Source: Haliotis rubra
Taxonomy: Eukaryota
Assembly: GCF_003918875.1 (NCBI RefSeq)
Contig: NW_025766969.1
Coordinates: 2,542,001 to 2,606,000 of the forward strand
DNA: 64,000 nucleotides
Reading direction: 5' to 3'
How positions within the stretch are numbered: the stretch's first letter is position 1; each line of letters begins with the position of its first letter. Both the position numbers and the translations under genes were made by a program. This document shows positions 17,325 through 53,995 of this stretch, piece by piece. The notes under the pieces were generated by a model. That model was given only the letters and a program-made list of their open reading frames with translations, was not told the origin of the DNA and did no database searches.

Positions 17325-17834
17325 ATGACTGATGCAGATAACAGGGTTATCCTCAATGTAGGAGGCATACGTCATGAAACGTATAAAGCCACCTTGAAGA
17401 AAATCCCGGCCACTCGATTGTCCCGTTTGACGGAGGCCTTGGCCAACTATGATCCGGTACTCAATGAGTACTTTTTTGATCGCCATCCCGGGGTCTTTGC
17501 TCAAATCCTCAACTACTATCGTAGTGGCAAACTTCATTACCCGACCGATGTGTGCGGTCCGTTGTTTGAAGAGGAGTTGGAGTTCTGGTCTCTTGATGCC
17601 AACCAGGTGGAACCCTGTTGCTGGATGACGTACACACAGCACAGGGACACCCAAGATGTGCTCGCCATCTTGGATCGGTTGGATCTTGACACAGACAAAC
17701 CAACAGAAGAGGACATCATGAAGAGGTTTGGACTTGAGGAAGAGTACAAACAAGGCGAGCTGAACTGCTGGCAGCGGATTAAACCAAAAATCTGGGCATT
17801 GTTCGATGAACCGTACTCGTCTACAGCCGCAAAG
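17325..17834 (+). CDS. Shaw: Shaw/Kv3 voltage-gated K+ channel, first coding exon (T1/BTB tetramerisation domain)
   Basis: Translation [35 protein letters not shown]...[44 protein letters not shown] closely matches invertebrate Shaw T1, including the HX5CX20CC Zn motif. The exon ends at ...[10 protein letters not shown], followed by AAG|GCAAGT (GC donor, phase 0). Confidence 0.96.
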
Positions 17835-20124
17835 GCAAGTCACCAGGTGTTTTGACTTAAATTGCCACCTTTCAGTGTGTAGAGTCCTTGTTGTGATAGT
17901 CATGTCAACATTGACAACCTCCCCTTGGCTAGGCCTCAATACACTGAACCATGGGAAACCAAAAGAGAGAGTTACTTTCAAATAATTAAACTTTTCATAC
18001 CAGTATTTACGTACAATTACAACAATATTTCATGCATACAATAGCTGTTTGAGTAGTCGCGTTTTTATAAAAACCAATCCTTTTCATATCCTAATTTTGG
18101 AAAGTTTCTTTTTCACAAAACGCCTACTCGATCAGTTATTTTTCCGAATACCGAAACAATAGTCTAATCTGTAATTTGGTCTTTCGACATCCATCTATAT
18201 TACGTAATATGATTACATATAATTATTTTTAAAAATAACAAATAATAAATCCGTACTCTCTGTGTGGAGGACGCAAGAGTTCCTTCAACAGAGGTCCTAC
18301 TCGATCAGTTGTTTGTCCTATGGTTCACTGTGATCGTAGAGCCATCTATCGGCGGAGGTCAAGCTAAAGGGGGGACATCTATATCGTGATCGACTCTTTC
18401 TCTTTGTTCTCTTAACTTAGACTGCTAGAACTCAGTTACACAATGTAGCATTATATATATATATATATACAACAAACTCACACTTTTTCTCGCTCCGGTA
18501 CACCCCAGCGTGTTAGCCACGGCAATATCAAATGTTATCCAAGTAGCCGAAGATGCTTGCTTCCTAATGGAAAATGAAAGGCGGTCCCATCGATGATGAC
18601 AAACGGAGGTATTCTAAAGGTGGCAATTTCCATTAATATTAACAGCTATGCGCTATGCCATATCAACAGCCACTGCATGACCACCTCACCTGTGTATTGG
18701 AATTTTAACATCTGGTTGGAGGGTATAAGCTTAACCACTGGTTGGAGGGTATGCTTCTTTTTGTCTTCAGGTTAAGTGATTGTCGAATATTAACCATCGT
18801 TTGACGAGATCTTGATGTAAGCTCTGTTTGTATTGAGGTTTTTCCTAAGGATATGTTGGTATGGATTGATAAGGCATTTCGGTCAAGCTAGTGTTTATGT
18901 ATTGCTTTTCAATGTTTGGAGGAGTTTTAACCATTACCAAATTGTATGTGGTTGTGAATGACTGTGTACTTGTACAGTAGCCAACGATAGGTATGCTTCA
19001 TCAGATATGTATGTCGTTGAATATCAGATATGCTCATCTTCGATTACATCACAGTAAGAGTATAAGCCTTGATAATCTAAAGCAGTGGATTAAACTTGCA
19101 ATTAACCTCCGGAAAGTGCTAGTCTTTGAAAGAGCACGTGACGTCACCAGATTTTGTAATTTAAATTGTCGTCAAGTAGGAAGATTTTGAAGGACAGATA
19201 TGGTGGTTTCAATTTGAAATTGAAATTATGTCTGCTAAATTAAAGAGACACCAGATATCATTTGCATGCGTTAGGATACCAGTGTACGTCTTAATAACTA
19301 TGTAGGCAGGAGTGTTCTGTGATATCGGCCATGGCATGTTAATCTGGAAGGCGGGATATTTATACAAAGATATCTCTTTATTACTCAAGCAGTACCAATG
19401 TTGATCCTAGATTTTCAAAGTTTATTATTGAAATTGCCACATGGACCTACATAAAAATATTGTAATTTTTTAGTCACGCTAGCACAGCTTATCTTTCCGG
19501 TTAGGTAGGTATTTGTAAGCATGGCGTGAGCTGTGCCGGGAGATTGAACGTTGAGACTGTCTGGAGGGAGCTATTAAAGGGAAATTATTAAATCATTCTC
19601 CAGTAGGGTCTGCTGTGGGTTGAATGAAAACTACAAAGAGGTGTTTATTTATGTCACCGTATTATCAGTATGCGTTCAAATCGTGTATTTAGTTTTCAAT
19701 TTGAGAGTGTAATGCCATCAATACCTCATTATAGTTTACACCTAGACGTTGGGTATATGGGCTAGGCGTGCAAATCGTTGTTGACCTTGTGTCCTCTGAT
19801 GAGGTGAATTGGTGGGATGAAGATACAACGTCGGTACATTTATCCAAGATTTACTTGCTTAACATGTTACAAACTGCATAAGTCACTTATGTCTACTGGA
19901 GGTATTTATTATGTATCGGAAGTGAAATAATACCTGTTTGAAACCCTGACGCTGCTCACTGAAAACCTCCCTTCCTAAAAGTACACAATATGACACAAAA
20001 CATTTATTCCACACTGAAACCCAATTTGCAAAGTTTATTGAAACTACAACTTTATAGAAACTTGAAACGAGTAAGATATTGTCTTTAATGTTAAAAAACA
20101 TTATTGTGGTGTTCCAATAGAAAC

Positions 20125-27759: not shown

Positions 27760-28684
27760 ATAATTGCGGTTATATCTGTGTTCTTCATAGTAATCTCTAT
27801 ATTGTCCTTCTGCCTCAAAACGCATCCCGAGATGAGAGTTCCGGTCTTGCGCAATACCACTTCCAAAACGGCTGACGGGAATACAACATGGCGACTAGAG
27901 AAAACAGAGACCGAACCTCACGACGCTTTTTTCTACATTGAATGTGCGAGCAATGCTTGGTTCACCTTCGAAATCATTATTCGCTTCATCGTAGCACCTA
28001 ATAAATTTGATTTTTTGAAAGCACCCGTGAATATAATTGACATTGTAGCCACGTTATCTTTCTATTTAGATTTCTTGCTCACAAAACTACAACAGGAAAG
28101 CGACATGCTGGAGTTTTTTAGCATTATCCGTATCATGAGACTTTGTAAGCTAACGCGGCATTCCGCGGGACTGAAGATTCTCATTCATACCTTCAAAGCC
28201 AGTGCAAAGGAGTTAATCCTCCTCATATTCTTCCTCGTGCTCGGTATCGTCATCTTTGCAGCGCTCATCTACTATGCTGAGCGTATTCAGTATAACCCGG
28301 AAAATGACTTCCAGAGCATCCCTGTGGGCTTGTGGTGGGCCATAGTCACCATGACAACAGTGGGATACGGGGACATGGTCCCTAAAACCTATGTCGGGAT
28401 GTTTGTTGGAGCCTTATGCGCATTGGCTGGTGTGCTTACGATAGCCCTTCCCGTACCTGTTATCGTCAGTAACTTCGCTCTGTTTTACTCGCATACTCAA
28501 GCAAGATCTAAACTACCCAAGAAGAGGAGACGGGTTCTACCAGTGGAGGCACCCCGCCCGAAGGGACCAAAAGCCCCAGGGGCGCCCGGGGGTGCTGGAG
28601 GCCCCGGACCAGGGGGCACACGCAGGATGAACGCCATCAAACATAACCATCCTGGGGCGTTAGAGGCGAAGATGGGCAGAATAG
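27760..28684 (+). CDS. Shaw: Shaw/Kv3 second coding exon: S1-S6, pore and proximal C-terminus
   Basis: Acceptor tttttactttcag|ATA (phase 0). Encodes [23 protein letters not shown] (S1), NIID (S3), [13 protein letters not shown] (S4), TMTTVGYGD filter, [10 protein letters not shown] (S6) and [11 protein letters not shown]. Donor G|GTAAAT at 28684/28685 (phase 1). Confidence 0.97.
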
Positions 28685-30970
28685 GTAAATGTCATTATTT
28701 GATAGTTGGTGTCGTTTAATCATTATTGTGATTTTAAAGTTCCCCTGTGGTATATTTCGTGTTGATGTAAAGGTGGTCCAGTGGTGATTCAAGTCCAATC
28801 ATGTCCTTCCAATAGTTTCCCGGAATAGTCGCTCGCACTACCCCATCACGTATTCAGACAGCCCATCACACTTCAGCTCATTAGTACCAGTCGTAGATCA
28901 AGTTCCTCACACTGCGTCGATGTTAGAAGTACCCAACCATCAGTATTTTGCATGGTCTCTCTTCCAATACGCTGCTCATGAACTGTTGTTTATATAACTT
29001 CTGTCATATACGTCACACTGCACGTGTAACATATGCCTCACGTGCATAAACTTGACTTGCACATGTTTTCCATCTTCTACACTTACAGTCGCAGCGAAAC
29101 CTACGCTCCCCGCCGTAGACTAGCGTACACGGTGATACTCAACTCGTACAGCCGAAATGCTGTTCAGTTTTGACAGGAACACATGTTATATATTTATATC
29201 CTGTAAACTAGTTAAGGACTGATGCATATATGGTTCTGTCGTCACCTTGACAACAGCAACTTCCTCCAGAGTGTGCTCTGAAAGAGCTACAAAACCGTAT
29301 TTCACTTTAAGAGTATAAGGTTTATGAAAATATGAAATATATATTGCTGTATAAATCATTATAAATTATTATAATATAGGTATTGTTCATCATTGGGACT
29401 CATGGGGATGTTTCACACTTGTAATGGTAACGCAAGCAGCATTGTTGACGTAATACAAGAATATTTGTTGACGTCATGTGTAATGACTTCACATTAGATG
29501 ATGGCGTCATAACATACCTCATATAGGCCACTTTATTCTTACCTATATTTCTTATGTGTCAATTTAAAAGGTGTCGCAGAACGCGTGTTTGAAATGTTAC
29601 TGATATTCTTGGTCTGAGTAAATCTGTGTTTATCGTCATTACCCGTTATGTTAGAATCATCAATGTATGGTTAAAGTGTCTAAACTGGCCGGAAGAGCCA
29701 TATTCAGTTGCTGCGGAGCTGGTTTTGCTTTAAACTTCCGTCCGACTAGAAAATAGACAGCTCTCCAGTATTGATGTCAGATATGTACGTTTTGTTACAA
29801 ATTTTATTAGAGGAAATATCAATATTCGCCGAAGAGAATATTTAATAGACGTGAAATCTGGCGATTTGTTGGTAATGTGGTTCGGTAGACATCAGTCGAT
29901 ATGGGCACTTGAATTAGGGGCATCTGTTCGTTCGTTTACTCAGCAATTGAAGCATCAGAAGCTACGGTAACGTACATTTTCTCATTTCGTTCCCTTAAAT
30001 CACGGTTGATTACTCTTCTTGATGCTTGTGAGCGAACAATATCTAACCGTACACGTGGCTAAATGTTCAGTATAATACACTTTGATGTGAAATATATTTC
30101 GTCGTAATATATCAGTTTCATAAATCACAAACAAATAATGTTTTTTTTGACAAGTTAAATGAAGTGTATTAGTGTAGTCATTTCAATCAAAAGGACCATA
30201 TCGTTGCACATTCAAGTGTTGTGCTTAGGATATCCGTTTCTGATGTACGGTGTAAGGGAGATAACTCTTGTTTGTGCGCAATTTGAGCGGCGTGATATTG
30301 CTTTCAAGGAAGGATGCCTCATCGATAGGGGCAACAATGAAAGTGTTAAATCTGAAATTATATCTCATGTAGATAGGCATCTTAACCCAACTGTGATATG
30401 TTGCTAGTAAATTCATTATGCTAAAGCAAGAGTTAAATAAGTAATAAATGGACAATTTCACATTTTACACGAAACCTCAAGAATTGTAGCAATTAGATAG
30501 AACTGGAAATAATATTTTAAGAAATTTGAAACATCCACTGAAGGATGCCGGTGTGTTCAGATAAAGCGGTTTCTTTCTTAAGTGTCGTTCCGGGTTTATT
30601 TCTAATATCTAAATTGTGTAAACGAACTTTGAATATGGAGAGAATGTATCCCCTCTAATTTGAATTTGGGTAAGGGTATCATGACCCTGTATTAAATAAT
30701 CGTTCTGCCCGTGCAGGTACAAAGTTATTGCCTCAACGTAAACCCTGGAAATAGAACAATCTCACACAAGGAAGTAACAGCGACTGACTGCTCCACGTGG
30801 CACAACATGTGTTGTTGAGCTCGAGCTATTTGTCAGCATCTCCGATGTTATAGCGGATAAAAACCTAATGTAGACATAGAACGACGTGATGAGTGCAGTG
30901 AGTTCAAACAGAGTATGACAGTGTAGACTTCTCGCTGTGTAATATATACTGAATTAACAATACTGATAGG

Positions 30971-31039
30971 TTTGGTTGCTTGGTTGGTTGTTTAACCCCG
31001 CACTCATCAATATTGTTTGGACCAGACGATCCAGTGATC
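30971..31039 (-). mobile_element. Short truncated/deleted family B SINE
   Basis: Tail and ggaccagac..ccagtgatc motif; 9-bp TSD actgatagg at 30962-30970 and 31040-31048. Confidence 0.75.
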
Positions 31040-32639
31040 ACTGATAGGCGAATACGTAAACATGGCGCTTGTTTTTATGAACAACATTAGCACTTATCTT
31101 CAATGTATTAAGCATTAGAGTCACGCTTTCTGTAGCTCTATATTTTAACACAACATTGTATTCGAGAAACAAACCCAGGACTTAAAGTGCCTAAAGATGT
31201 GTCTTGGGTACTTAAGCTGGCTTGTGTTATGTGAAGCAAAGATATACATGTTTCACATGTCTCTCCCTTGAAGGGACCCTTATATTTAATTAGGACACAG
31301 TTTACATTTGTTCAGATTTATGAACATATTTTTACTGTTACTTTTCTCGACGTTTCTATTGGGAGACGTCCACGTACACTTATAACCCTGCTTCTCAATT
31401 TGTTACCCACATTTTGTGACACAATTCGTATGTTCACACAACTTAAAATTGTACTTAGAAATTGCATTTGCTTCAAAGCGATTTAGTGCTTGTAGGTAGA
31501 GCTTGCCTTTACTGTCGCCAGAGCAGTGGATATGTCCATGTATTGAATATATGTCTAGCTTTCTAGATCAACCTGGGATGTACATACACCTTGAGTGGGG
31601 TTCCGAGCCGGGTCCCACTCATTAGTTTGGACTGGAATTACCACAAGTCTACCGGTGTCCACTGCGTGAACCTGAGTGTTTATTGTACTTAATATTTCAT
31701 TTTCAGGTGTGTGGCGTGCTATTGTCTTTATGCTACTGTTTATGAGTAATTAGGTAGAACAGTTTAACAATGGCCATCCAATAAGTCTTCTTCTTTATCA
31801 GCTGCCGTTAATGAATTTACATTTTTCATTCACCGTTTGAATGTCACTGTAATCCCTTTTTGTAACTTTTATTCGAACTTTGTATTTCAATTCCCCACTA
31901 GCTTTTCAGATACAACTTTCCACATGAATGTTTATGTGTCTTATTCCCTATCTAGACATTGCAGGTGGTATTTATTGTGTGATCTGATTATTTTTTTTCA
32001 TTGAATTGTCACGTGATCAGCAGCTTCTGTCGTGAACCTGGTGCGCATGGTGTTGGGTTAAGTAGCAGAGGGTCAAAGGTCAGATTGGATGTGGATGTGT
32101 AGGTTATCCGTGATCTAAATTCCTTCAAATAAAAACATTCCATACTATCATGTGATCATACAGACATGTAAGGTTCTTTTGAGCTTACAGTGCAGCGATA
32201 TTTAAAGGATTTCATGAAATTCACCTGAATTCTTTTGAAATACAAATGGTAAATTATATGCAATTGTATTTTTAATTATTATAGTCTGTATTGGACTTGT
32301 AATTGTGAAACATTTAGAGATGTAAAGTCCCTCAGTAGTTGTAATACAATGTTTTTTAGTTTTTAAAGATTAAATTCGAAATTAGCTGTACTGCAATATG
32401 AATCCTTACACACTTGACGATTAATTCTATCACGAATGTTATTTTCACTGTCAACAAAGAACACCAAATATCGGTACATGCTCTCAGAAAACGTTTCATA
32501 CCTAAAATGTGTTTTGATTTAATTGACTTGCATGGAAGTGCCCTACCTGCCCAGACCTGATATTGAGAGCTACTTTGCCCAATACCGTGTATTATTGTCC
32601 ACCCGCATAGACATTTAGATTACTCCTTCTCTTCTCTAG

Positions 32640-32678
32640 CCCACGGGGGCGCTTTACAGGAGCTGATGCCCTTCCGTA
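32640..32678 (+). CDS. Predicted 39-nt Shaw C-terminal microexon ((A)HGGALQELMPFR)
   Basis: Strong pyrimidine tract tactccttctcttctctag|, perfect GTAAGT donor, phase 1-1, length a multiple of 3, open frame, GC-richer than its flanks. Confidence 0.7.
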
Positions 32679-34254
32679 GTAAGTCATAACGTCTTCCGGT
32701 TTGTATGCACGCTTCCGGTTTCAGGGTTCATTTTGTTTCATGTGGCTCCCTGTCGAACACATGGGATGGACGACACTGAAGTATCATTTTGAAACATTCA
32801 TTCAGACGAATTGAACTTCACATGATTATGCTATGTGTTAGTGCGTCGACCGGGAGTCATTGTATGAAACTCAGAATTGCGACTTGCGTTTTTTCACTTA
32901 GTTTTGTTATAGTCAGTGGCATATCTCCTGTAGTCGGTTAAGACAAGCATTTTTGAGTTCGAAGTGCTTTCTTCGTAACAAAATCTAGGTAGAAAGTGCA
33001 TATGCGCATGTGGAAATATTCCTCTTGCTATAAGCGACTGATGTGGGCATGTCTTGCTGCGCATGTCTTTGCGCATGCCGGAACTATGGGTGCATGCTGG
33101 TGTGGCTCCTCTGTGTGCATGTCAGGCCGTCCGCGCGCTTCTGTCACCGTGCTGACAACAGACGTCCTAGCTAGGTGTCCACGAGATGCGTGGCTCTCAG
33201 GTTACCAAGATCCAATGAGATTAGTTTTGTTATTATATTCATGATCTAGTATGTCATCAATGGATCCTCCCAAACACGATGCAAGAGTTATTCGTGTTTG
33301 ATCAAACATAATCTGTGGCCATCTTGAAAAAACTAATTCTCCAGGTGAGGAAAGGAATCTGAAAATCCAGCAGATTTACTCGACCATTAAAACAGATTTG
33401 GTTCTACACATTAAACACGAGTATTTGAATGACGATTGTGTAGCCATAAACATAATAAGATTGACAATAGACAGGGTTATGTTTCCATGGAGATGTGTGT
33501 GTGCATATAGATGTAGACCTATGACACTATATAGGCACTGTAGTTTTATGCATACAGAATAATGTCAGCTGTGCACAGAATACATACACATTAGAAAAGT
33601 TGTAACCAATCAACAAAAATTCAGCGTGAGGTTTAACCAACTGAATCGTGTGTTTTAGTTGATTGGTTACCCTCCCCTTCCCCGCGAAATAGAAGTTGAT
33701 GTAGACGTGTTCACAAATGGTACCTGCTGTACCCTGTTCATACCACATATCCCATGAATGTGTTACAGCAACTAGTCATACCCGTCTGTTGATGCAGATA
33801 GACATTAGGCTCCAAGTAGCTTTACATCTACATATGCCAAACAAAATTTAAAAAAAATAAAGCTAAAAAATAGTTTACAGTAGATTTGAGTTAATAAAAA
33901 TATATAAAAATGGCGCACCTCTTGCCGTGTTTTGAAAACGGACTTCGATCTCGGAGCAAATAGTTCTTACAACAGAATTGCCATACGTGACACAAGTGTC
34001 CACATATACACCACGTGACTGCGTGGTTCCGAACTGTTTGCACTCGAAATGAGCATGCCAAAAAGTTAATCATTTCATATATGTTTCATGAACGTTTATA
34101 GAAACCTTTACCTATTATGACCTTGTCCGTTTCATTTTAGGAATAGCCGTGGTGTATGCTAACTACCGAAAGACTGCAGAAGAGAAAAATACGCATTTGA
34201 ATAAATATTATATGAATTCCCCTAATATATTTACAACCTTATATTTCCTACCAG

Positions 34255-34284
34255 GTGCCTACAATGTGGGCCTTCTTATGGGTG
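34255..34284 (+). CDS. Predicted 30-nt Shaw microexon (AYNVGLLMG)
   Basis: ccttatatttcctaccag| acceptor with an upstream ctaat branch-like site. Donor G|GTAGAG is only moderate. Phase 1-1, open frame. Confidence 0.45.
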
Positions 34285-35761
34285 GTAGAGTATCAATTTA
34301 GTTTTGGCTAATTTCTTTCTTTGCTGGATTCCCGATCGTTTATACGACCATTGCAGATGTTTCATTAAATGTAAAATCCTTATTTTCGATAACTTCAATT
34401 AATCCCGTTATAGAGTTCTAACAACTCTATTTTGTCGTCAAAATATTACGTTTCTTAAACAAAGTATTTAAATCTTAAACATCTGCAATCGTTTGGGGGC
34501 ACATCACAACATTGCATGTCTTGAACAGCAGTGCACAGTTAACATTCATTCTCAGAGGTTTGTGAACAATAACACTTATTTCGGGGGACATTCAACAGTT
34601 AGATACAATAAATAACTCCAACGCCAGTGAATAACACGTCTCAACGATGCAGATTCCATTCAGGTTTCACTGAAACAAACAGCAATGTTTGGGAGGACGT
34701 GTTAAAGTCGTTTCTTTGTTATATGTGGAATGGGAAACATAACCTCTGAAAATGAATCGACTGTGTGAAATACAACTCACACATTTTGACGGTTACAGTC
34801 TGCATCCATATATACCATATGTAGGTAAACTAAGGAAACGTGGAAATAGATTTCATTTGTTAACGCTGATACTTTTAATAAATGAGTTTCCTTTTGGTAA
34901 TGGAGCTTTGATGAGTTAAGACGCATGATGTGATTCTCATCATCGGTATTATCACAAATAGTTTCCAGAATTTCAGCAACCAGCTAAGATTTGATATTTA
35001 ATTACACTGAACGCACTGTTGATGCACAGGTCAAAATTCATTCATATTGCTAATAAGTAATACTCATAGTTCTACAACGGATTTCATTTTCCAAATTATG
35101 TTAAAACATAAATGTTGTGTATAGTTTTCATTTTACAACTGCACGTGTGGTTAAACACAGTTTTACTGAAATGTTCTTGTTTTAATTACATGTTTCTGAT
35201 GCGTGTGGAACCTATTTAAAAGGTTAAAACATTTGCTGCACTAATGCGCGACCGACGCCAGCATACATTGCAACAGATAAGCGTATCGATATAAATGTAC
35301 ACATATCTTCACGTATGGGTTCATCAACTAATTTCAATGCTACCAACCATTTAGTGAACACAATGCATTTTGTTCACATTTCATTAAAATGTTCATGACT
35401 AGATGATCTCCCAAACTGCACTGAATACCATTAATAGTTAAATCTGGATTAAACCCGATATAAGGCTGTTTGACTAATTCATTGAGTGAAGTACTGTAAG
35501 CAATGCACGTCATAAACAGCTTAAGCGTGTCTATCTGTTAAACCATGGTGTGTCTATGAAAAGTGTGTTGTTTATGCATATTATTCTTGTCTTGTTGATG
35601 TCAACACTTCCCTTGAAGTCACAAACATATCAGGGCAACGTATCAGTCCTAGTATCCATACGTATCCATGACATTATGAATGCTTGACCATTGCTTGGAA
35701 CAATATCAATGTTGTAAGCTTTGCATACGAAATCCCACGGTAATCTGCAACAAGTGGTCGA

Positions 35762-35863
35762 GTTGGTTGGTTTGTTGTTTAACGCCGCACTCAGCAATAT
35801 TCCACTATATGGCGGCGGTCTATAAAAAATCGAGTCTGGACCAGACAATCCAGTGATCAGCAT
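35762..35863 (-). mobile_element. 5'-truncated family B SINE
   Basis: Reverse complement of the B 3' half with a (GGTT)n tail. Confidence 0.85.
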
Positions 35864-36023
35864 AATGACAGTTGTAGAGAAGGACTGATATGTGTCAAGT
35901 ATATATTTGGTTTGAAATGTATTTGTTTCACTGATCCTTTCAAGGGAAGTGTTGTAATGAATGTATGTATAACCTGATTATTGTGTTTGTGTAAACAGGT
36001 GCTAATTCCACCTTATATTTCAG

Positions 36024-36065
36024 CTGTCGGAATGGGTGCCAATCGTCCGTTCTATAATAATATTG
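36024..36065 (+). CDS. Predicted 42-nt Shaw microexon (AVGMGANRPFYNNI)
   Basis: gctaat branch point, then tccaccttatatttcag| acceptor and G|GTAATA donor. Phase 1-1, open frame. Confidence 0.55.
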
Positions 36066-38155
36066 GTAATAAACAAGACACATCCCAATTCGCTATCATT
36101 CCCATCACGTGTGACTTATCACTTATGCCGAAACATCATATATTTTATCCTCACACATTCTGACTGCAAGAATCCATTTGAATTCAGTTTCAGTTTCATT
36201 TCCTAATATGTCGATCTTTAACAGAGTTCCTTCTTATTTCATTGAAGCACCCTGAATTATTTTCAATTTTCACAGAATGGTATTTTTATGATAGCAAACC
36301 CAGGCTTGAATTATTCAACTGTTTTAACAACTATTTCGTTTTTGCTAGTGCCAACAAAGCACTTGATCTTATGTTCAGATGGCATCATCTTTGCTCATAC
36401 CATGTAACATATTCATCATATCGGGCGCGTTTCACATGTACCCCTTGCATTGTTTCACGATAAGAAAAAGTGATATTTTATGTACTTGTCAAACGGAAAC
36501 TATACACACGGTAGAAGAGAAGACGAATAAACAAATCCTTATTAGACCACCATCTACTCTATCATTGTAACCGTCATCAGTCGTCATCACCATTCACATC
36601 ACCAGTTTATTAAACACCTGTCCATATCTGCAACCATATGAGAAGGGAAACTTGAAATGTTCTAACTGCATAATGCATTTTGACAGTAATACACCGTATG
36701 TCAATTATGTTGTTGAGTTACCTAGCGTGTGAAGGAGTAGAACGTCACGTGATCAGTCAGCCTCCCATTTCAGGAATGTTGAAATATATCGGAAATATCA
36801 CAGCTAATTTAATTTATAACCACTTTACTTCTAATCCCAATGATGAAATATCCAGACTTATGAATTCCCTGTAGTGTCTTTCCTTAAAGGTTTGGATGCT
36901 TTTGGAGATATTTCTTTAAAGACAGCCGAGGCGGAGTAAATTGAAACTCGCCCACTCACTCTCTACTTAAGGTTTCCACATTGAAGGACCGTCGTCTCTT
37001 GTGATCCATATTTCCTTGAATGCCACGTTGACTGCATCATAAGCGTATATTCCTATTATGTATATGATATACTGCATGTGACTGCATGAGACCATCAATC
37101 CTGCATGATTTAAGTGTGGTAATATCACACTCGTCATTCCTTTCGTTTCATTAGTATAATGCTCATCTGATGTTCAGTTTTAGACTAAAACTCTTTCATT
37201 TCAGCGCACAAGTATACTTATTTTCTTTCCTTATCATATGCTATATCGACTTACAAGTGTGTTGCCTAAGATATATGAAATTTATCTATGTTTTTTCCAT
37301 TGTTCATGAACCTATGAAAGGATGTTACCATGGCGTTTTAATTTCTTTATGGTTTTTTTTTCGCATATATCCACATATTGTATTGGTTGTAAAATATACC
37401 AGGAATTATTTGAGCCAATGTCGTTCATTTCTGTTGTTAAGTAACACGTGTTAAAGCAGCATTTTCAAATAAACTATTTCCGTTTTTTTACAAGAATGAA
37501 AAAATGTCTGTGTCCTGTGTGGGACTTGCTGTTACTACAATCATATGAGTTTTTCTATGTAAGAATAACGATACCATTATTCCGTTTTGCTCTGTTTTGT
37601 TTACTAACAACAGCATGTAAGTTTTGTTAATCTTTGTCCAACTGCACAGTTCGTTACTTCTATTTCAAATAAAGACGATGATTCGAGAAGTGTGTGACAC
37701 AGACATTGATAGGATGCAACAACATTCACTACCTATAAATGCAGGTCGAGCCGGGACTGTTTTGAAAAGAATATGTAGTTGTACAGAAGATAGTACATGG
37801 AAAATATCTAGCAAGTCGACGATGCCTTGAATTCACATGACACGATTATCAACATACATGTAGATGCAGGAAGATTCTGTTGAATTTTATATAACAGTCA
37901 CAGTGAGGATTGACTGCATACTGAAAACACGTATTAACAGATCCCCAGCTCTCGAACCTCACCAAAGCTGCCCCTTACGAATACAAACCAAAATAGGCTT
38001 TAGTGTCGCTTCTTATGCCTAACAACTTCACTACTAGATTCTAGCTTTTGATATGCGTAAATCAGTCTGTGATTTGATTGGAGCTTCCTTATTTGTGACG
38101 TCATCTAGTGGTAGCTGGCAATAGCTAATCTTACTTGTTTTGTACTATCTACAAG

Positions 38156-38335
38156 GCCGAAATGGGGAGGAGGCAATCCCAATGCTGATGCTAAACCATA
38201 CTGAAAGTAGTGGAGGGCAGGACACGAGCGCCCGTTCACGATCGCAAAGTACCGTTGAAAGGTCACCTCCACGGATGGTAGAAATAAGCTCCAATCCCGG
38301 TTCACCCCTCAAAGTAACTGAAATCAAAACTTCTG
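38156..38335 (+). CDS. Predicted Shaw C-terminal exon (GRNGEEAIPMLMLNHTESSGG...SPLKVTEIKTS)
   Basis: gctaat branch, cttacttgttttgtactatctacaag| acceptor, 180 nt open and Ser/Thr/Pro-rich, G|GTAACT donor, phase 1-1. Overlaps ORF 38140..38544. Confidence 0.7.
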
Positions 38336-40113
38336 GTAACTATATACAACTGTCTTTACTCTCAACTTTAGCCATTCTTTTTCAATGTATTCAGTTGCAA
38401 ATTACCTCCCTTGTTCTAGACCTTGTCACGTGGTCAGTCAGGATGATAGTGATTGGTTATTGTCAGTGGAAAACCTTCGATGGTGTCTGTTTACGACTTG
38501 TTTTTAGCAGAGCTTGCACGATGCCTAACCCCTACCGGTGGTAGTTCCTTCTATCCTCGCATGGTTGTTTATTTTCTCCCTTGTTTTTCTTGCTGATTTG
38601 CCGTGGTTTTGCAGTTGCTTTGTGTTCTTTTGTTTTTCGTTTGAAGATTTCTACAGATTTCACATGATAAGTTGCTCAACAAATAAAGACTATGGTGCAG
38701 ATGGGATGTTTATGAGCATGTATCATCAAATAGAATTTGAAGTTGGGTACAGGATGATAAAATCTATTTGAAGAACATTTTGCGACCGGGCTTATCTCAA
38801 TTACTTATACAATACACAAATGTTAAATATCCAATACGGAAACCTAACAAGCTGATGATAAATTAAGCTCCCGGATAACTGCTACATTATGTATGTCGTT
38901 TATTTGTACATTCAAAACATTCGTGTTTTCAAACTGAACACCTGTTTACTTGTTAAGTAAACTTTCATTCATTTCCTCGCATGTAAAACCATCATTTTCA
39001 TAACCATTAAAATTTTCCGCATCTTAAAACAATAGGAAATGTTGGAGTTTTTGTATGATTCATTTTCACTATTCCATCTCGAGTTATCTGTCTCGGTTGA
39101 ACGTGATCTTCGTATTTTACAGCTTAGTGTCATGAAATATGACTATCCTTCACCAACCAAGATTTCATCCAAACACATACTGTATGATTGGATTATACCT
39201 AAACTTCAAGTTTTTCGACACGTTAGATTTTGACATCACTGTCAACATTACAGCTTATGACACCAACCAAATCAGTATGTTAACACAAGCTATTTATCAA
39301 CGTTTATATGAAGATGAAAACGCTTCTAAAGAATCTATTCACAAGTAGCACCTTTTGAATAAATTATATCACCCTTGATGATTCATTTTGTAATTAATCA
39401 TGAACACCATATGAATTCTGCCCTTTAAGTTTATAGATATACTCTCGATCTCGGGGTTCGCCAATAAAGAATACTAATTTTGCTAACTTGTCTTGCAAAA
39501 GAAAGAATGCACCTTTGTTTGTTTGCTGAAATAAAACAAACAAGAAATGTTTCTTCGATGGGGATATATACGGATATTATGTTATATTCATGATATCAAT
39601 GAATATCTCACCGTGTTGTTTTCATACTAGTAGCATTATAATGTTTTGATCCAGTTTTCAGGCGCATAGTTCCTTTAGCCTGAATGTTCATACTTGATCT
39701 GAAGTGCGAATAGCATTTTGTGTAAAAAGGTGAACCCCTACGTCCAGAGATTGTTTGAATATTCCCACGTGTAGATTTTTATTATCTTAGTATATTTTCA
39801 CAATCACAGAATACATGTATTATTATAAACGTGTTTGTTTTGACACAGTAGCAGAGTCAATACAACTAAACTTGATTACCACAGACCTACTGTCAGCGAT
39901 TGTGACTATGTAATTGTACTCATACCAGTGTACTCCGAGACATTGTGCGCTTGCATAAAGAATTGTTTCACTGAGCACATTTACATACATATAATGTACT
40001 GTAGGAAGCCCTGTAGATATACATGCATGATATACACGACGGTGGCACATTAACCGTCATTATTTGTCATATTCTTTGAAACGTTGTAACCTTCTCCAAC
40101 TAACTGTTTTCAG

Positions 40114-40266
40114 ACGCGCAAGGGGGACCAACTGCTCTCTCCAGTCTCCTTGTCACACCCAATGCTCAGCTAGCCATGAACTCCACAGCAGGGCCAGCAC
40201 CACCTTCAGCACCTGCACCAGCAGCGCAACTGCAGTGTGGGGAGCAAGACAAAATTTTAGAAAAAG
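40114..40266 (+). CDS. Predicted Shaw C-terminal exon (DAQGGPTALSSLLVTPNAQLAMNSTAGPAPPSAPAPAAQLQCGEQDKILEK)
   Basis: ctaac branch plus tgttttcag| acceptor, 153 nt open, Pro/Ala-rich and GC-rich, AAG|GTACCT donor, phase 1-1. Confidence 0.72.
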
Positions 40267-40464
40267 GTACCTTTTAGTATGCTCCTTTACACTTTTGGAT
40301 GGGAAGGTTCCACAGGTTAGTGTTACGTTTGTTCCCACTTCACTGTGTCGTTGTAACAAAGTCAGACATATTTCTTCATATCAATTAGTCAGACATATTT
40401 CAATTTTACTTTCTCTGCGAGGTTGTGATGCAGTATTTAGTTTCTGTTGGTGAACGGATTTGTT

Positions 40465-40604
40465 AGGGTGATATGTTAGGTTAAAGCGTTCGCTGGTCAT
40501 ACCGAAGACCATGGTTCGGTTTCCCAGATGGTTGCAAGGTGTCATCCACCTTGATATAGGTGGAATAGTGTTTAGAGCAGTCTAAAACCATATACCCATT
40601 CGCT
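40465..40604 (+). mobile_element. Old family A SINE
   Basis: ggttaaagcgttcgctggtcataccgaagaccatggttcggtttccc is a diverged family A head. Confidence 0.6.
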
Positions 40605-40876
40605 GAGTATGTGCTTGTCAGTGTGTTCAGATGTAGGTAGACAGCATGAACATAATCTGAACGTTCGGACTGAATCATGCTGGCTATTCAGTGATACCTA
40701 TTTTACCAATAGAAATCTTATATTTCAGGGTATGGTAACGATTACGTGTTGGTTAATGTAATATAACTTAGTCACTTTGAGACCAGTCGCGACATGGCTG
40801 AAACAATGCCCATGCCAATGCCCCGTAAAATATAAAAAAACCAAAACAACATTTTTTATTCACTTAGTAGAATGTA

Positions 40877-40950
40877 CAGTGGATTCTGTATAATCCGACA
40901 CTCACTGGGATCGGGAAAAATGTCGGATTATACAGAGTGTCGGATAATTC
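40877..40950. mobile_element. Tc1/mariner (pogo/Tigger-like) transposon end
   Basis: TA followed by CAGTGGATTCTGTATAATCCGAC, with an internal inverted copy tgtcggattatacaga. The partner end was not found. Confidence 0.55.
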
Positions 40951-42976
40951 AATTTCTTCTTGCTTGAATACTTTTCAAACAGTACCATACATTGTAACTG
41001 TCTTATATCTTGGTAAATAAAGGGAAAAAAACAAATTCTGTATTTACATGTACATGTATATCATTGGATGTATTATCTCAAGTACAATATACATACATGT
41101 ACTGCTATGTATGTGCGTTGAAGTATGTAAGTAAATGCTATTGGATACCGGCATATTTATGTGAAATGTTTACAAACTTTATATGACCTTATTTACATCC
41201 TTATTATATATGATGTTGGTCACGCTATCTAACTGAAGCACTTTTTACGTTTCAGTTCCCTTGTTAATTTTGTAATGAGGTAAACACATTTATTGATAAC
41301 ATGGTGAAGGAACTTCGGTGGTGGCCTTGGTGTATCACTGTCACTACCACTAAGAATTGGGTACATGGGGTGATTACAATCAATTTCAGTGAATTTCTGA
41401 GACCATTTCTTGTTCATTTGAACCAATGGTTCAAGTGAGCGTATGTCACGGCTCTGTCAGTTGTCCATCCGTCCGTTTTTCCAGTTGTCCATCCGTCCGC
41501 TCTTCCAGAGCATTTATGGTTTCGGACTCTCCTCAGAAGCCTCAATGTCAGTCTTGGTTAAACACGAGCTGTCCTTGAAACGGTTGGTTTCAAATGGAAT
41601 TCACCTAATTCCGATCGGATCTCGATGAAGACGGAAAACATTGTACCAGTAGTGTTGTATTTGTCAGTATAGAGTTATTTCAGAATATGTAATAATATAC
41701 AGCATGGGAATGTAATGAACTGCTGAGATGTGCTATTATGCCTAGTCTACTTTCGTTTTCATCCATATTTGACTTTCCACATTTTGGCATTCTTTTATGG
41801 CATTAAATTTTCCGTATTTTCAACATTTCCTCGTTACCATTTGGTTATGAAGCTGTGGATTTGATACCTTTAATGTAATTTAAGAAAGGTCATGACTGCC
41901 ATATTGAAAATATCATTGTTACAGATGTTACCAAGGTTTACTGTTTGCTTCAATATTTTACAATTGTATGAAGTCATGTACTTACCATTTGTTGTGTGTT
42001 TCGGATGTGGTTTTCATGAACACTTTGCTAAAACAGATCTAGAAATGTTGCCTCTTCATAGCTGCTCTGTAACCATTTGCTTTGTGCAGCTGGGTACAGT
42101 AATGTGCCCAAAGAACTCCAGTCCAGCTCACAGCGTGTTGAAATATCATTAGGTCAAACTATTATCAATGTGTAATTCTAGGTATAATGGTTTTCTTGGC
42201 ACTGTACCCAGACTTTCTATTTTCATGTAGCCGTTTATTTTAACGTTGACATATGTCATAAAGGTGATAACGCCCCACAACATATACTGATGTCTGAATG
42301 GGTTTTTTGACAAACAGTGATTATAGTGCGTTTAAGACGGTAACAGTTTTCGGTAATTTGATTTGGGACTTTTGCATGACCATCTTTATTTCATATAATT
42401 CAGCAACATTTAGGTGAGCTACAGTGCCTCGTGGCTTTTTCCTTTGCTTAGATATGCTTGCTGTCGCTTTCTGTTTTTACCCTAAACCAACCTAAAAAGC
42501 GGACATTCAAAAGAACATATATTTTTTTCAGTTTTTTCCGCATTGGTCTATTCTATTCTTTGTTTATTCCATTATAGGATAGTTTTCGGCGTGTGCCTTA
42601 GGTATGTTATCACTGTGTTATGTCTCCATATCGACGTAACATGCTCTTTTGTATGACATGGGCTACAGAACCGTCAATACAAAAGTGTGCTTGTTTGTCT
42701 TTGGTGACTCACTGGAATACACTATATCATTTGTATTACTGTGTTATTCCACATTTTTTGCTTTTTAATATTCTCTTTAAATTGGAAAGGCGTTTTGGAT
42801 GTCGAGATTTGAATCTTTATGCTAGATGTGTTAGATGTGATATATATTAATATACATATAATATACGTTTGTGTGTAAGTTTTTGTGAGCGTGGATGATG
42901 AAAGGGGATTAATGCGAAATCATTTCTTTTTTAAAACGAAATCTTTTATTCATGTAACTGGTGATCTTTTCTGTAG

Positions 42977-43158
42977 GATTACCCATTCCAACGTCAGATG
43001 GCGCTGTGATAGAACCGGTAGTGACGTCACTTCCGTCTGGGAACGGAAGCACAACACCGACGTCCAACCAAGAACAACGAGCACTGGGGTCGTCCTCCCC
43101 GACAACAACCTCCCCATCAGCCCCAACTACAAACAATCTCGTTGCAGTAAATACATAG
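42977..43158 (+). CDS. Predicted terminal coding exon of Shaw (GLPIPTSDGAVIEPVV...NNLVAVNT*)
   Basis: atcttttctgtag| acceptor in phase 1, Ser/Thr/Pro-rich open frame to TAG at 43156-43158. All predicted exons sum to 2061 nt, i.e. 686 aa plus stop. Confidence 0.7.
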
Positions 43159-49879: not shown

Positions 49880-52800
49880 TAGCACGTTAGTGGTATATTC
49901 AACCCCATACCTGACCCCCTGGCACGTTAATGGTATATTCAACCCCATACCTGACCCCCTGGCACGTTAATGGTATATTCAACCCCATACCTGACCCCTG
50001 GCACGTTAGTGGTATATTCAGCACCATACCTCACTCCCTGGCACGTTATTGGTATATTCAACCCCATACCTGACCCCCTGGCACGTTAATGGTATATTCA
50101 ACCCCATACCTAACCCCTGAAACGGTTATTTTATATTCAAGCCCATACCTCACCTCCTGAATCGTTTAGGGTGTATTCAGCACCATACCTGAACCCTCCG
50201 GAAACGTGAGGGTATATGCAAATTCCATACCTGACCCCTGGAACGTTTAGGGTATATTCAGCACCAATACCTGACCCTGGCACGTTAATGGTATATTCAA
50301 CCCCACACCTAACCCCAAGGCACGTTAATGGTTATATTCAACACCATACACGAGTCCCTGACACCGGTGACACGTTAATCGTATCTTCACCAATATACAC
50401 AACGCACGTTAATGGTATATTCAACACCATACCTAACCCCTGAAACGGTTATTTTATATTCAAACCCATACCTCACCTCCTGAATCGTTTAGGGTATATT
50501 CAGCACCATACCTGACCCTCCGGAAACGTAAGGCTATATGCAAATCCCATACCTGACCTTCTGGAACGTTTAGGGTATATTCAGCACCATACCTGACCCC
50601 CTGAAACGTTTAGGGTATATTCAGCACCATACCTGACCCCCCGAAACGTTTAGGGTATATTCAGCACCATACCTGACCCTGAAACGTTTAGGGTATATTC
50701 AGCACCATACCTGACCCACTGGCACGTTAGTGGTATACTCAATCCCACACCTAGGCATACCTGCTGGCCCCTTGCACGTTCAGGGTACATTCAGCACCAT
50801 ACCTGATCCCCCCGAAACGTTTAGGGGTATATTCAGCACCATACCTGATGCCCCGAAACGTTTAGGGTTACATTCAGCCCCATACCTGACCCCCTGGCAC
50901 GTTAATGGTATATTCAACCCCATACCTGACCCCTGGCACGTTAGTGGTATATTCAGCACCATACCTCACTCCCTGGCACGTTATTGGTATATTCAACCCC
51001 ATACCTGACCCCGGCACGTTAGTGGTATATTCAACCCCATACCTGACCCCTGGCACGTTAATGGTATATTCAACACCATACCTAACCCCTGAAACGGTTA
51101 TTTTATATTCAAACCCATACCTCACCTCCTGAATCGTTTAGGGTATATTCAGCACCATACCTGACCCTCGGGAAACGTAAGGCTATATGCAAATCCCATA
51201 CCTGACCTTCTGGAATATTTAGGGTATATTCAGCACCATACCTGACCCCTGAAACGTTAAGGGTATATTCAGCACCATACCTGACCCCCCCGGCACGTTA
51301 ATGGTTATATTCAACACCATACACGACTCCCTGACACGTCAATCGTATCTTCAGCAACATACACGACGCACGTTAATGGTATATTCAACCCCATACCTAA
51401 CTCCCCTGAAACGGTTATTTTATATTCAAGCCCATACCTCACCTCCTGAATCGTTTAGGGTGTATTCAGCACCATACCTGAAACCTCCGGAAACGTGAGA
51501 GGGTATATGCAAATTCCATACCTGACCCCTGGAACGTTTAGGGTATATTCAGCACCACACCTGACCCCTGAAACGTTTAGGGGTATATTCAGCACCTTAC
51601 CTGACCCCCAGAAACGTTTAGGGTATATTCAGCACCATACCTGACCCCTGGAAACGTTAATGGTATATTCAGCACCATACCTGACCCACTGGCACGTTAG
51701 TGGTATACTCAATCCCACACCTGACCCCAAGGCATACCTGAACCCCTTGCACGTTCAGGGTACATTCAGCACCATACCTGATCCCCGAAACGTTTAGGGT
51801 ACATTCAGCACCATACCTGATGCCCCTGAAACGTTTAGGTTACATTCAGCCCCATACCTGACCCCTGGCACGTTAATGGTATATTCAACCCCATACCTGA
51901 ACCCTGGCACGTTAATGGTATATTCAGCACCATACCTGACCCACTGGCACGTTAGTGGTATATTCAACCCCATACCTCACCCCTGGCACGTTGGTGGTAT
52001 ATTCAACCCCACACCTGACCCCACGGCACGTTAATGGTTATATTCAGCACCATACACGACTACCTGACACGTTAATCGTATCTTCACCAACATACACGAC
52101 GCACATTAATGGTATATTCAACCCCATACGAAACCCCTGAAACGGTTATTTTATATTCAAGCCCATGCCTCACCTCCTGAATCGTTTAGGGTATATTCAG
52201 CACCATACCTGACCCCCTGAAACGTTTAGGGTATATTCAGCACCATACCTGATCCCCTGAAACGTTTAGGGTATATTCAGCACCATACCTGATCCCCCGA
52301 AACGTTTAGGGTATATTCAGCACCATACTTGACCCCTGAAACGTTTAGGGTATATTCAGCACCACACCTGACCCCTGAAACGTTTAGGGTAATATTCAGC
52401 ACCACATCTTACCGCCTGAAACGTTTAGGGTATATTCAGCACCATACCCGAACCGCTTGCACGTTTAGGGTATGTTCAGCACCATACCTGATCCCCTGGC
52501 ACGTTTAGGGTATATTCAGCACCACACCTTACCCCTGAAACGTTAATGGTATATTCAGCACCACACCGTACCCCCTGAAACGTTTAGGGTATATTCAGCA
52601 CCATACCTGACACCCTGAAACGTTTAGGAGTCATTCAGCACCATACCTTACCCCCTGAAACGTTTTTAGGGTATATTCAGCACCATACCTGACCCCCTGA
52701 AACGTTTAGGGTATATTCAGCACCATACCTTACCCCTGAAACGTTTAGGGTATATTCAGCACCATACCTGACCCCTGAAACGTTTAGGGTATATTCAGCA

Positions 52801-53995
52801 CCATACCTGACCCCCTGAAACGTTTAGGGTATATTCAGCACCATACCTGACCCCCTGAAACGTTTAGGGTATATTCAGCACCATACCTGACCCCCTGGCA
52901 CGTTTAGGGTATATTCGGCACCATACCTGAACCCCTTGCACGTTTAGGGTATATTCAGCACCATACCTGACCCCTGGCGCGTTTAGGGTACATTCAGCAC
53001 CATACCTGATGCCCCGAGACGTTTAGGGTACATTCAGCACCATAACTGATGCCCCTGAAACGTTTAGGGTACATTCAGCACCATACCTGACCCCTGAAAC
53101 GTTTAGGGTATATTCAGCACCATACCTGACCCCCTGAAACGTTTAGGGTATATTCAGCACCATACCTGACCCCTGGCACGTTTAGGGTATATTCAGCACC
53201 ATACCTGACCCCTGGCACGTTTAGGGTATATTCAGCACCATACCTGACCCCCTGGCACGTTTAGGGTATATTCAGCACCATACCTGACCCCTGAAACGTT
53301 TAGGGTATATTCAGCACCATACCTGACCCCCTGAAACGTTTAGGGTATATTCAGCACCATACCTGAACCCCTGAAACGTTTAGGGTATATTCAGCACCAT
53401 ACCTGACCCCTGAAACGTTTAGGGTATATTCAGCACCATACCTGACCTCCTGAAACGTTGAGGGTATATTCAGCACCATACCTGAACCCTGAAACGTTTA
53501 AGGTATATTCAGCACCATACCTGACCCCTGAAACTTTTAGGGTATATTCAGCACAACACCTGACCTCCTGTAACGTTGAGGGTATATTCAGCACCATACC
53601 TGAACCCTGAAACGTTTACGGTATATTCAGCACCATACCTGACCCCCTGAAACTTTTAGGGTATATTCAGCACCACACCTGACCTCCTGTAACGTTGGGG
53701 TATATTCAGCACCATACCTGAACCCTGAAACGTTTAGGTATATTCAACCCCATACCTTACGTCCTGGAACTTTTTAGGGTATATTCAGCACCACACCTGA
53801 CCTCCTGTAACGTTCAGGGTATATTCAGCACCATACCTGAACCCCTGAAACGTTTAGAGTCATTCAGCACCACACCTTACCCCTGAAACGTTTAGGGTAT
53901 ATTCAGCACCATACGTGATCTCCTGGAACATTGAGGGTATATTCAACTCCATACCTTACCTCCTGGAACATTTAGGGTATATTCAAACCCCCTGT
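49880..53995. repeat. 39-40-bp satellite array (cctgacccctgaaacgtttagggtatattcagcaccata), ~100 copies
   Basis: Directly visible, ~4.1 kb. Confidence 0.97.

What the first reader, a model, noticed from the sequence alone, without database searches (positions are those of the whole stretch)
28685..43158. Modular 'plug-in' C-terminus: five frame-preserving phase-1 cassette exons (three microexons) behind the Shaw S6
Seen: after the pore exon (donor in phase 1), every predicted internal exon (39, 30, 42, 180, 153 nt) is phase 1-1, a multiple of 3 and open, and the last exon is entered in phase 1. Known: Kv3/Shaw channels use alternative C-termini for localisation and modulation. Inferred: any subset could be skipped without frameshift, giving up to 32 tails on one channel core. 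That would be a combinatorial splicing system that automated annotation would probably miss because of the 30-42 nt exons.
Basis: partly seen in the sequence, partly recalled or inferred. Interest (0 to 1): 0.8.

Follow-up and report, generated by a model that had tools for sequence, protein, structure and literature searches.

The report
Abalone Shaw channel alternative tail exons
The five small in-frame exons behind the pore of this abalone Shaw (Kv3) potassium-channel gene are real, conserved and alternatively spliced, but NCBI's automatic annotation of abalone genomes already lists them as many isoforms, so the finding is correct rather than new.

Summary
The window is Haliotis rubra (100% identical to GCA_003918875.1 over the 27.8-kb gene locus). 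It carries a Shaw/Kv3 gene on the + strand.

- E1 32640-32678
- E2 34255-34284
- E3 36024-36065
- E4 38156-38335
- E5 40114-40266
- last exon 42977-43158

All five are phase 1-1, and every possible junction codon is a sense codon.

Evidence that they are exons:
- RefSeq Shaw-like isoforms of H. rubra, H. rufescens and H. asinina use exactly these borders.
- Spliced transcriptome contigs give GT..AG joints E1->E3 (4 runs, 3 species), E3->E4 and E1->E4.
- All 13 substitutions among four Haliotis genomes in E2-E5 and the last exon are synonymous third positions.
- Modules recur in other gastropods and bivalves. E4 also occurs in a priapulid and the C-terminal end in a nemertean.

Alternative use is supported: 9 of the 32 possible subsets appear in Haliotis RefSeq models. 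E5 is never skipped in Haliotis. E2 appears only in H. rufescens X9 and gave no joint in my four runs.

The claim that automated annotation would miss these exons is wrong. Independent, single-molecule combinatorial use remains unproven. Interest is low to moderate.

The parts
17325..17846 (+). First coding exon (T1/BTB_2 domain). It has two donors: a GC donor after 17834 and a GT donor after 17846, which adds ASHQ.
   Evidence: tblastn of P0136/P0137; sequence; isoforms X1 and X2 differ by ASHQ.
27760..28684 (+). Pore exon (S1-S6, TVGYGD, polybasic KKRRR stretch). It ends in phase 1.
   Evidence: It is 100% identical in protein to H. rubra X1.
32640..32678 (+). E1, a 39-nt phase 1-1 cassette encoding HGGALQELMPFR, with a strong GTAAGT donor.
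   Evidence: Joints 32678->36024 in 4 runs and 32678->38156 in X8. It is skipped in RefSeq X3/X5/X8/X10. It is 39/39 identical in 4 Haliotis species and conserved in gastropods and bivalves.
33006..33121 (+). Cluster of six GCATG motifs 330-440 nt downstream of E1, inside a >=96% conserved island (32831-33150).
   Evidence: All six are conserved in H. asinina. Any role as an Rbfox-type enhancer is inferred only.
34255..34284 (+). E2, a 30-nt phase 1-1 cassette encoding AYNVGLLMG, with a weak GTAGAG donor. A second GT lies 3 nt upstream.
   Evidence: It is present in H. rufescens X9 (P0158). It is identical in 3 other Haliotis species apart from one synonymous change and sits in a 65-nt perfect match with H. 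asinina. Homologues occur in Patella (27 nt), in hetero- and caenogastropods (HYNHF..) and in oyster X3. No joint was found.
36024..36065 (+). E3, a 42-nt phase 1-1 cassette encoding VGMGANRPFYNNI. Among the proteins retrieved it was seen only in Haliotis.
   Evidence: Joints E1->E3 and E3->E4; RefSeq isoforms with and without it. The motif GANRP occurs only in Haliotis proteins, and I found no homologue in the Patella locus.
37074..37108 (+). Three TGCATG motifs between E3 and E4, inside a conserved island (37073-37282).
   Evidence: Function is inferred only.
38156..38335 (+). E4, a 180-nt phase 1-1 cassette encoding RNGEEAIPMLMLNH...SPPRMVEISSNPGSPLKVTEIKTS.
   Evidence: It is covered by contigs in 4 runs, including a 6523-nt contig. 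It is skipped in RefSeq H. rubra X7-X10. It is 180/180 identical to H. asinina and conserved in bivalves and Priapulus.
40114..40266 (+). E5, a 153-nt phase 1-1 exon encoding AQGGPTALSSLLVTPNAQ...ILEK. It is included in every Haliotis model.
   Evidence: Its homologue is skipped in Biomphalaria glabrata X9.
41256..41275 (+). Coding part of an alternative terminal exon (VPLLIL, then stop), also entered in phase 1.
   Evidence: H. rubra X6 (P0147) and H. asinina X9 (P0157). Located and conserved in 4 Haliotis species.
42977..43158 (+). Common last coding exon (GLPIPTSDGAVIEP...NNLVAVNT, then stop).
   Evidence: The end NNLVAVNT is conserved in molluscs and in a nemertean.

Best explanation
This is the 3' half of the Haliotis rubra Shaw/Kv3 potassium-channel gene. 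After the constitutive pore exon, the cytoplasmic C-terminal tail is built from five symmetric (phase 1-1) exons plus a common last exon.

E1, E2, E3 and E4 are true cassette exons that are included or skipped. E5 is included in all Haliotis models. An alternative terminal exon and donor read-through give further ends. Because every exon starts and ends in phase 1, and no junction codon can be a stop, each choice adds or removes a peptide module without changing the rest of the protein.

The tail is predicted to be disordered and carries short, deeply conserved motifs. Inferred, not shown: the modules act as plug-in linear motifs that change trafficking, partner binding or phosphorylation of one channel core. 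Also inferred: exon choice is set by weak donors (E2-E5) and conserved intronic elements, including the GCATG clusters downstream of E1 and between E3 and E4.
For: Identity of the locus:
- The window is 100% identical to the H. rubra assembly over 27,834 nt.
- The best protein hits are named Shaw, and Pfam finds Ion_trans.

Exons and alternative use:
- RefSeq isoforms of three Haliotis species use exactly these borders in 9 different subsets.
- Contig joints with GT..AG ends were found for E1->E3 in 4 runs of 3 species, E3->E4 in 3 runs, and E1->E4 in one run that also has E1->E3.

Coding constraint:
- E1, E2, E4 and E5 are 100% identical to H. asinina, where the whole aligned locus stretch (exons included) is about 81% identical.
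- All 13 substitutions among four Haliotis genomes are synonymous third positions in the phase-1 frame.
- Between Patella and Haliotis, 5 of the 8 aligned E2 codons differ only at a synonymous third position and 2 change the amino acid.

Age of the modules:
- The modules align across gastropods and bivalves. E4 is also in Priapulus, and the C-terminal end is in Lineus.
- The same kind of cassette choice is modelled in Biomphalaria, Physella, Babylonia and Ostrea.

Frame compatibility:
- All junction codons are sense codons.

Disorder:
- There are no Pfam domains in the tail.
- AlphaFold2 gives mean pLDDT 48 with no secondary structure.

Candidate regulators:
- GCATG clusters are conserved inside >=96% identity islands.
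Against: - No joint touching E2 was found in the four runs laid. The only contig over E2 was unspliced. In Haliotis, E2 rests on one RefSeq model plus conservation.
- RefSeq Gnomon isoforms can combine locally supported junctions, so the nine subsets are not proven as full-length molecules.
- E5 skipping is not seen in Haliotis.
- Logan contigs drop rare variants and give no quantitative inclusion levels or tissue information.
- The function of the modules and the role of GCATG are inference only.
- Cassette exons are not clearly more conserved than constitutive ones: p=0.03 against H. asinina, not significant against two other species.
Confidence: 0.85

Rival explanations
1. Only a few tails really exist, for example E1+E3+E4+E5 as the main form plus one or two minor ones. 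On this view exon choices are coupled, and the many RefSeq isoforms come from model building that recombines separately supported junctions. The system would then be ordinary alternative splicing, not a combinatorial one.
For: In all four runs the assembled joints are E1->E3 and, in three of them, E3->E4. Only one run shows an alternative joint (E1->E4). E5 is never skipped in Haliotis models, and E2 appears in a single model. No single-molecule data were available.
Against: The same exon choices are modelled independently in three Haliotis annotations and in Biomphalaria, Physella, Babylonia and Ostrea. E1->E3 and E1->E4 coexist in run X8. All cassette exons are under strong purifying selection with conserved flanks.
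Confidence: 0.3
2. E2 (34255-34284) is no longer used as an exon in H. rubra. Its conservation would then reflect an intronic regulatory element, and the H. rufescens X9 model would be a rare or spurious splice.
For: No E2 joint was found in four transcriptome contig sets. The only contig over E2 is unspliced (34178-34343). E2 is absent from H. rubra isoforms X1-X10. Non-exonic islands with similar conservation exist in the same introns.
Against: E2 keeps its AG and GT and an open phase-1 frame in four Haliotis species. Its two variants are synonymous third positions. The peptide aligns with an exon at the same place in Patella, where 5 of the 8 aligned codons differ only at a synonymous position and 2 change the amino acid, and with exons at that place in caenogastropods, heterobranchs and oyster.
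Confidence: 0.1
3. The short open segments are chance AG..GT stretches in a long intron and are not exons.
For: 573 such phase-1-1 open segments occur in the region by chance, and most of the real ones have weak donors.
Against: Spliced contigs, RefSeq proteins, and cross-species and cross-class conservation.
Confidence: 0.01

Closest known systems
NCBI RefSeq 'potassium voltage-gated channel protein Shaw-like' isoforms of Haliotis rubra (X1-X10), H. rufescens (X1-X11, e.g. XP_046374153.1 = X9) and H. asinina (X1-X10)
   Same: It is the same gene. For H. rubra it is the same DNA, and the exon borders are the same. The models already show E1, E3 and E4 as skipped or included, E2 in H. rufescens X9, and the alternative terminal exon.
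   Different: E2 is not in any H. rubra model I retrieved. The annotation does not note the uniform phase-1 design, the deep conservation or the GCATG clusters. I found no paper describing it.
Vertebrate Kv3 (KCNC1-4) alternative C-termini, e.g. Kv3.1a/Kv3.1b
   Same: One channel core carries alternative cytoplasmic tails downstream of a post-S6 polybasic targeting motif. The splice variants differ in axonal versus somatodendritic targeting (PMC9287412, introduction, citing Xu 2007 and Gu 2012). The polybasic KKRRR stretch is also constitutive here.
   Different: From my own knowledge, vertebrate variants arise mainly from alternative 3' terminal exons or read-through. Here, internal symmetric cassettes are inserted in front of one conserved common end (..NNLVAVNT). 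I detected no sequence similarity between the tails and any Pfam family.
Neuronal short-exon and microexon programmes (Srrm/eMIC-dependent, Rbfox-dependent)
   Same: The exons are short, frame-preserving and highly conserved, with conserved flanks, and they lie in an ion-channel gene. eMIC exons in flies are enriched in ion channels and have UGC near the 3' splice site, UCUC-rich tracts and CUAAY branch points (PMC8797185). E3 has TGCTAAT at -24 and E1 has a CTCCTTCTCTTCTCT tract. GCATG clusters are present.
   Different: At 30-42 nt the exons exceed the strict 3-27 nt definition. Neural specificity and dependence on any factor were not tested here.

Membership tests
Shaw/Kv3 voltage-gated K+ channel | N-terminal T1 (BTB_2) domain, six-TM Ion_trans domain with a TVGYG pore, and closest relatives named Shaw | tested here: met
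   Pfam Ion_trans 7e-47. BTB_2 + Ion_trans are recorded for the full proteins. Top hits are Shaw at 83-89% identity. The window is 100% identical in protein to H. rubra Shaw-like X1.
Cassette (skipped) exon | Both an inclusion junction and a skipping junction observed in RNA | tested here: met
   E3: the joints E1->E3, E3->E4 and E1->E4 are all present in run X8. For E1 and E4, inclusion is seen, and skipping is seen only in RefSeq models.
Cassette (skipped) exon | The same criterion applied to E2 and E5 in Haliotis | tested here: inconclusive
   E2: inclusion appears only in H. rufescens X9, with no joint. E5 lay outside the stretch laid, so its inclusion rests on the RefSeq models, and it is included in all Haliotis models. 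Skipping of its homologue is seen only in Biomphalaria X9.
Combinatorial (independent) splicing system | Exon choices combined freely on single molecules | not testable with these tools
   Only contigs and Gnomon models were available. 9 of 32 subsets are modelled. Long-read cDNA is needed.
Microexon | Length 3-27 nt (strict) or up to 51 nt (wide definition) | tested here: inconclusive
   The exons are 39, 30 and 42 nt. The strict limit is not met and the wide limit is met. Patella E2 is 27 nt.
Rbfox-regulated exon | Conserved (U)GCAUG within a few hundred nt of the exon, plus dependence on Rbfox | tested here: inconclusive
   The motif part is met: six GCATG at 33006-33117, all conserved in H. 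asinina, and 23 in the region against about 9.5 expected. Dependence on Rbfox cannot be tested here.

The most novel reading that the evidence does not exclude
The molluscan Shaw tail could be an ancient modular disordered region. E1, E2-type, E4, E5 and the last exon are shared by gastropods and bivalves, E4 by a priapulid, and the C-terminal end by a nemertean. On this reading the uniform phase-1 cassettes are chosen independently in different neurons under conserved intronic GCATG (Rbfox-type) control. One channel core would then gain many targeting or modulation states. E3 would be a microexon born in the abalone lineage.
Probability: 0.3. Interest if true: 0.45.

Novelty: already known. 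Interest (0 to 1): 0.25.

Why it matters
The result shows that a tool-free reading of raw sequence placed five exons, three of them 30-42 nt, to the base, which is a useful calibration of the scan.

Biologically, it documents that the invertebrate Shaw/Kv3 tail is a set of frame-neutral modules conserved across molluscs. This parallels the alternative C-termini that set Kv3 targeting in vertebrates. However, the exons and their alternative use are already in RefSeq, so nothing new is opened unless long-read data show truly combinatorial, cell-specific use. The only local addition is E2 for the H. rubra annotation.

Tried and rejected
1. Splice-site logic alone: a strict filter (pyrimidine tract >=75% and GTRAR donor) kept only E1 and one false candidate. 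That is no more than in shuffles, so sequence alone cannot prove E2-E5.
2. E3 as a duplicate of E2: they share a 12-nt acceptor tract, but the local alignment score was 24 against a null of 20 +/- 2.4, so I rejected this.
3. Pfam on the tail ORFs gave no family.
4. AlphaFold2 on the tail with 16 sequences gave pLDDT 48 and no structure. I used it only as a hint of disorder and made no fold search.
5. The E2 junction was sought in four runs and not found.
6. Looking up H. rufescens X9 (P0158) on its contig failed because only the longest product is on record.
7. Extra conservation of cassette exons over constitutive exons is weak: p=0.03 in one comparison and not significant in two.
8. Two literature searches found nothing specific on Shaw tail splicing in molluscs or other invertebrates.
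9. I used single exons by reference and database proteins instead. Junction codons were checked three letters at a time.

Full report
**What is in the window**

The stretch belongs to a Shaw/Kv3 potassium-channel gene on the + strand.
- The exon 27760-28684 (925 nt) is bounded by ttcag| and |gtaaat and encodes S1-S6 with TVGYGD.
- It matches Pfam Ion_trans at 7e-47. It is 83-89% identical to proteins named Shaw from other molluscs.
- The first coding exon (T1 domain) lies at 17325-17834/17846.
- The window is 100% identical over 27,834 nt to contig QXJH01000030.1 of GCA_003918875.1, which carries the protein annotated as Shaw-like isoform X1 of Haliotis rubra. So this is blacklip abalone.

**Checking the observation**

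- E1 32640-32678 (39 nt)
- E2 34255-34284 (30 nt)
- E3 36024-36065 (42 nt)
- E4 38156-38335 (180 nt)
- E5 40114-40266 (153 nt)
- last exon 42977-43158

Each internal exon starts with two bases that finish a codon and ends with one base that starts a codon. The upstream last bases are G or A. The downstream first two bases are CC, GT, CT, GC, AC and GA. No junction can therefore make a stop, and all 32 subsets stay in frame.

By itself this property is not evidence. The 14.3-kb interval holds 573 open phase-1-1 AG..GT segments of 27-240 nt. A strict splice-site filter keeps only E1, because E2-E5 have weak donors (GTAGAG, GTAATA, GTAACT, GTACCT).

**Evidence that they are exons**

*1. Proteins.* A search with the tail of a land-snail Shaw protein, and then with the Haliotis tail, returned RefSeq isoforms of H. 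rubra, H. rufescens and H. asinina. Their tails are exact translations of the window's exons, joined with the predicted junction codons.

*2. RNA.* I laid Logan contigs of four runs on 32500-38450 (5,951 letters, within the operators' limit). Two runs were of the window's species and one each of two related species.
- Joint 32678->36024 (E1->E3, GT..AG) appeared in all four runs.
- Joint 36065->38156 (E3->E4) appeared in three runs.
- Joint 32678->38156 (E1->E4, skipping E3) appeared in run X8.
- One 6,523-nt contig holds E4.

*3. Selection.*
- Against H. asinina the whole aligned stretch is about 81% identical. E1, E2, E4 and E5 are 100% identical, E3 is 41/42, and the splice sites are conserved.
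- Across four Haliotis genomes plus one polymorphism seen in a contig, all 13 differences in E2-E5 and the last exon are synonymous third positions in the phase-1 frame.

*4. Depth.*
- The modules HGGALQELMPFR (E1), NGEEAIPMLMLNH...SPPRLVEISSNPG.P.KVTEIK (E4) and TALSSLLV.PNA (E5) align across gastropods and bivalves.
- So do DGAVIEP and the end NNLVAVNT, both in the last exon.
- E4 is recognisable in Priapulus.
- The C-terminal end is recognisable in the nemertean Lineus.

**E2**

E2 is the weakest of the five.
- No joint touches it. The only contig over it is unspliced.
- It is absent from H. rubra X1-X10.
- E2 sits in a 65-nt perfect match with H. asinina, centred on the exon.
- Patella caerulea has the same exon at the same place (AYNMGLLL, 27 nt). 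Of its 8 aligned codons, 5 differ from the Haliotis ones only at a synonymous third position and 2 change the amino acid.
- Caenogastropods and heterobranchs have HYNHF(A/G)..L. there. Oyster isoforms X3 and X4 differ by AYPYGYFL there.

I conclude that E2 is a real, old coding exon. Its use in H. rubra is still to be shown.

E3, in contrast, was seen only in Haliotis.

**Alternative use**

Haliotis RefSeq models contain nine subsets:
- E1E3E4E5
- E3E4E5
- E1E4E5
- E4E5
- E1E3E5
- E2E3E5
- E3E5
- E1E5
- E5 alone

There are also other ends:
- An alternative terminal exon at 41256-41275 (VPLLIL, then stop), also entered in phase 1.
- Read-through of the E5 donor (GTF, then stop) in H. asinina X10.

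E5 is in every Haliotis model, but its homologue is skipped in Biomphalaria X9. Similar choices are modelled in Physella, Biomphalaria, Babylonia and Ostrea.

What is not shown is free combination on single molecules. Gnomon can recombine locally supported junctions, and contigs cannot phase exons.

**How it most likely works**

Shown:
- The exons are symmetric, so they insert or delete peptide modules without touching the channel core or the conserved end.

Supported:
- The tail has no Pfam domain.
- It folds to nothing in AlphaFold2 (pLDDT 48, no secondary structure).
- This fits a disordered region that carries short conserved motifs.

Inferred from established knowledge of Kv3 channels:
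- Alternative tails behind a constitutive polybasic post-S6 motif change targeting and modulation (PMC9287412 introduction). KKRRR is present in the pore exon here.

Inferred for regulation:
- E2-E5 have weak donors.
- There are conserved intronic islands.
- Six conserved GCATG lie 330-440 nt downstream of E1.
- Three TGCATG lie between E3 and E4.
- A TGCTAAT lies at -24 of E3. It resembles the UGC and CUAAY features described for fly eMIC exons (PMC8797185).

None of these regulatory roles was tested.

**Comparison and novelty**

The closest known thing is the RefSeq annotation of this very locus.

I found no paper on Shaw tail splicing in molluscs. The uniform phase design and its depth are therefore undescribed in print, but they are ordinary features of alternative exons in disordered tails.

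I rate the finding as already known, with low to moderate interest.

**Limits**

Noticed in passing
window 35762-35859: A repeat of about 100 nt in the E2-E3 intron is present at summed contig depths of 26,000-129,000 in all four runs, on both strands, with many different flanks. Two further copies lie in the H. asinina locus (L001:12940-13041 and 17264-17362). It is probably an abundant SINE-like element that is also present in transcripts.
   Followed up: partly
window 31779-32108 (perfect 177-nt match 31814-31990); also 28909-29118, 29777-29906, 36096-36333, 37544-37673, 38913-39012: These are intronic islands at least 96% identical to H. asinina, where the whole aligned locus stretch is about 81% identical. 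None is in any retrieved isoform, and they look non-coding. They could be splicing regulators or unannotated exons.
   Followed up: partly
window 17834-17848: Exon 1 has a GC donor (AAG|GCAAGT) and a GT donor 12 nt further on (CAG|GTGTTT). RefSeq isoforms X1 and X2 differ by exactly the four residues ASHQ, which supports the other first-stage note on this window.
   Followed up: partly
window 28655-28684 versus 32648-32678: The last ten residues of the pore exon ([10 protein letters not shown]) resemble E1 (GALQELMPFR), with 15 of the first 21 nt identical. In Biomphalaria, Physella, Babylonia and Gigantopelta, a donor 30 nt upstream in the pore exon removes the first copy when E1 follows (HNHP|AHGGALQ..). 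H. rubra has GGG instead of GGT there, so it has no such donor. This may be an old internal duplication.
   Followed up: partly
window 28685-28720: Reading through the pore-exon donor gives a short tail, [11 protein letters not shown] then stop. The 170 nt after the donor are at least 96% conserved with H. asinina. Many transcript-derived Shaw proteins of other molluscs end a few residues after the same junction (..RIGK..). This suggests a short isoform made by intronic polyadenylation, as with Kv3.1a.
   Followed up: no
window 34281-34286: E2 has two GT donors 3 nt apart (ATGG|GTG|GTAGAG). Patella's E2 is 27 nt, which corresponds to the upstream one. H. rufescens X9 uses the downstream one.
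   Followed up: no
window 50001-54000: G+C rises to 0.47 and GC skew drops to -0.26 to -0.29, unlike the rest of the window. Something different lies there, perhaps a gene or repeat on the minus strand.
   Followed up: no
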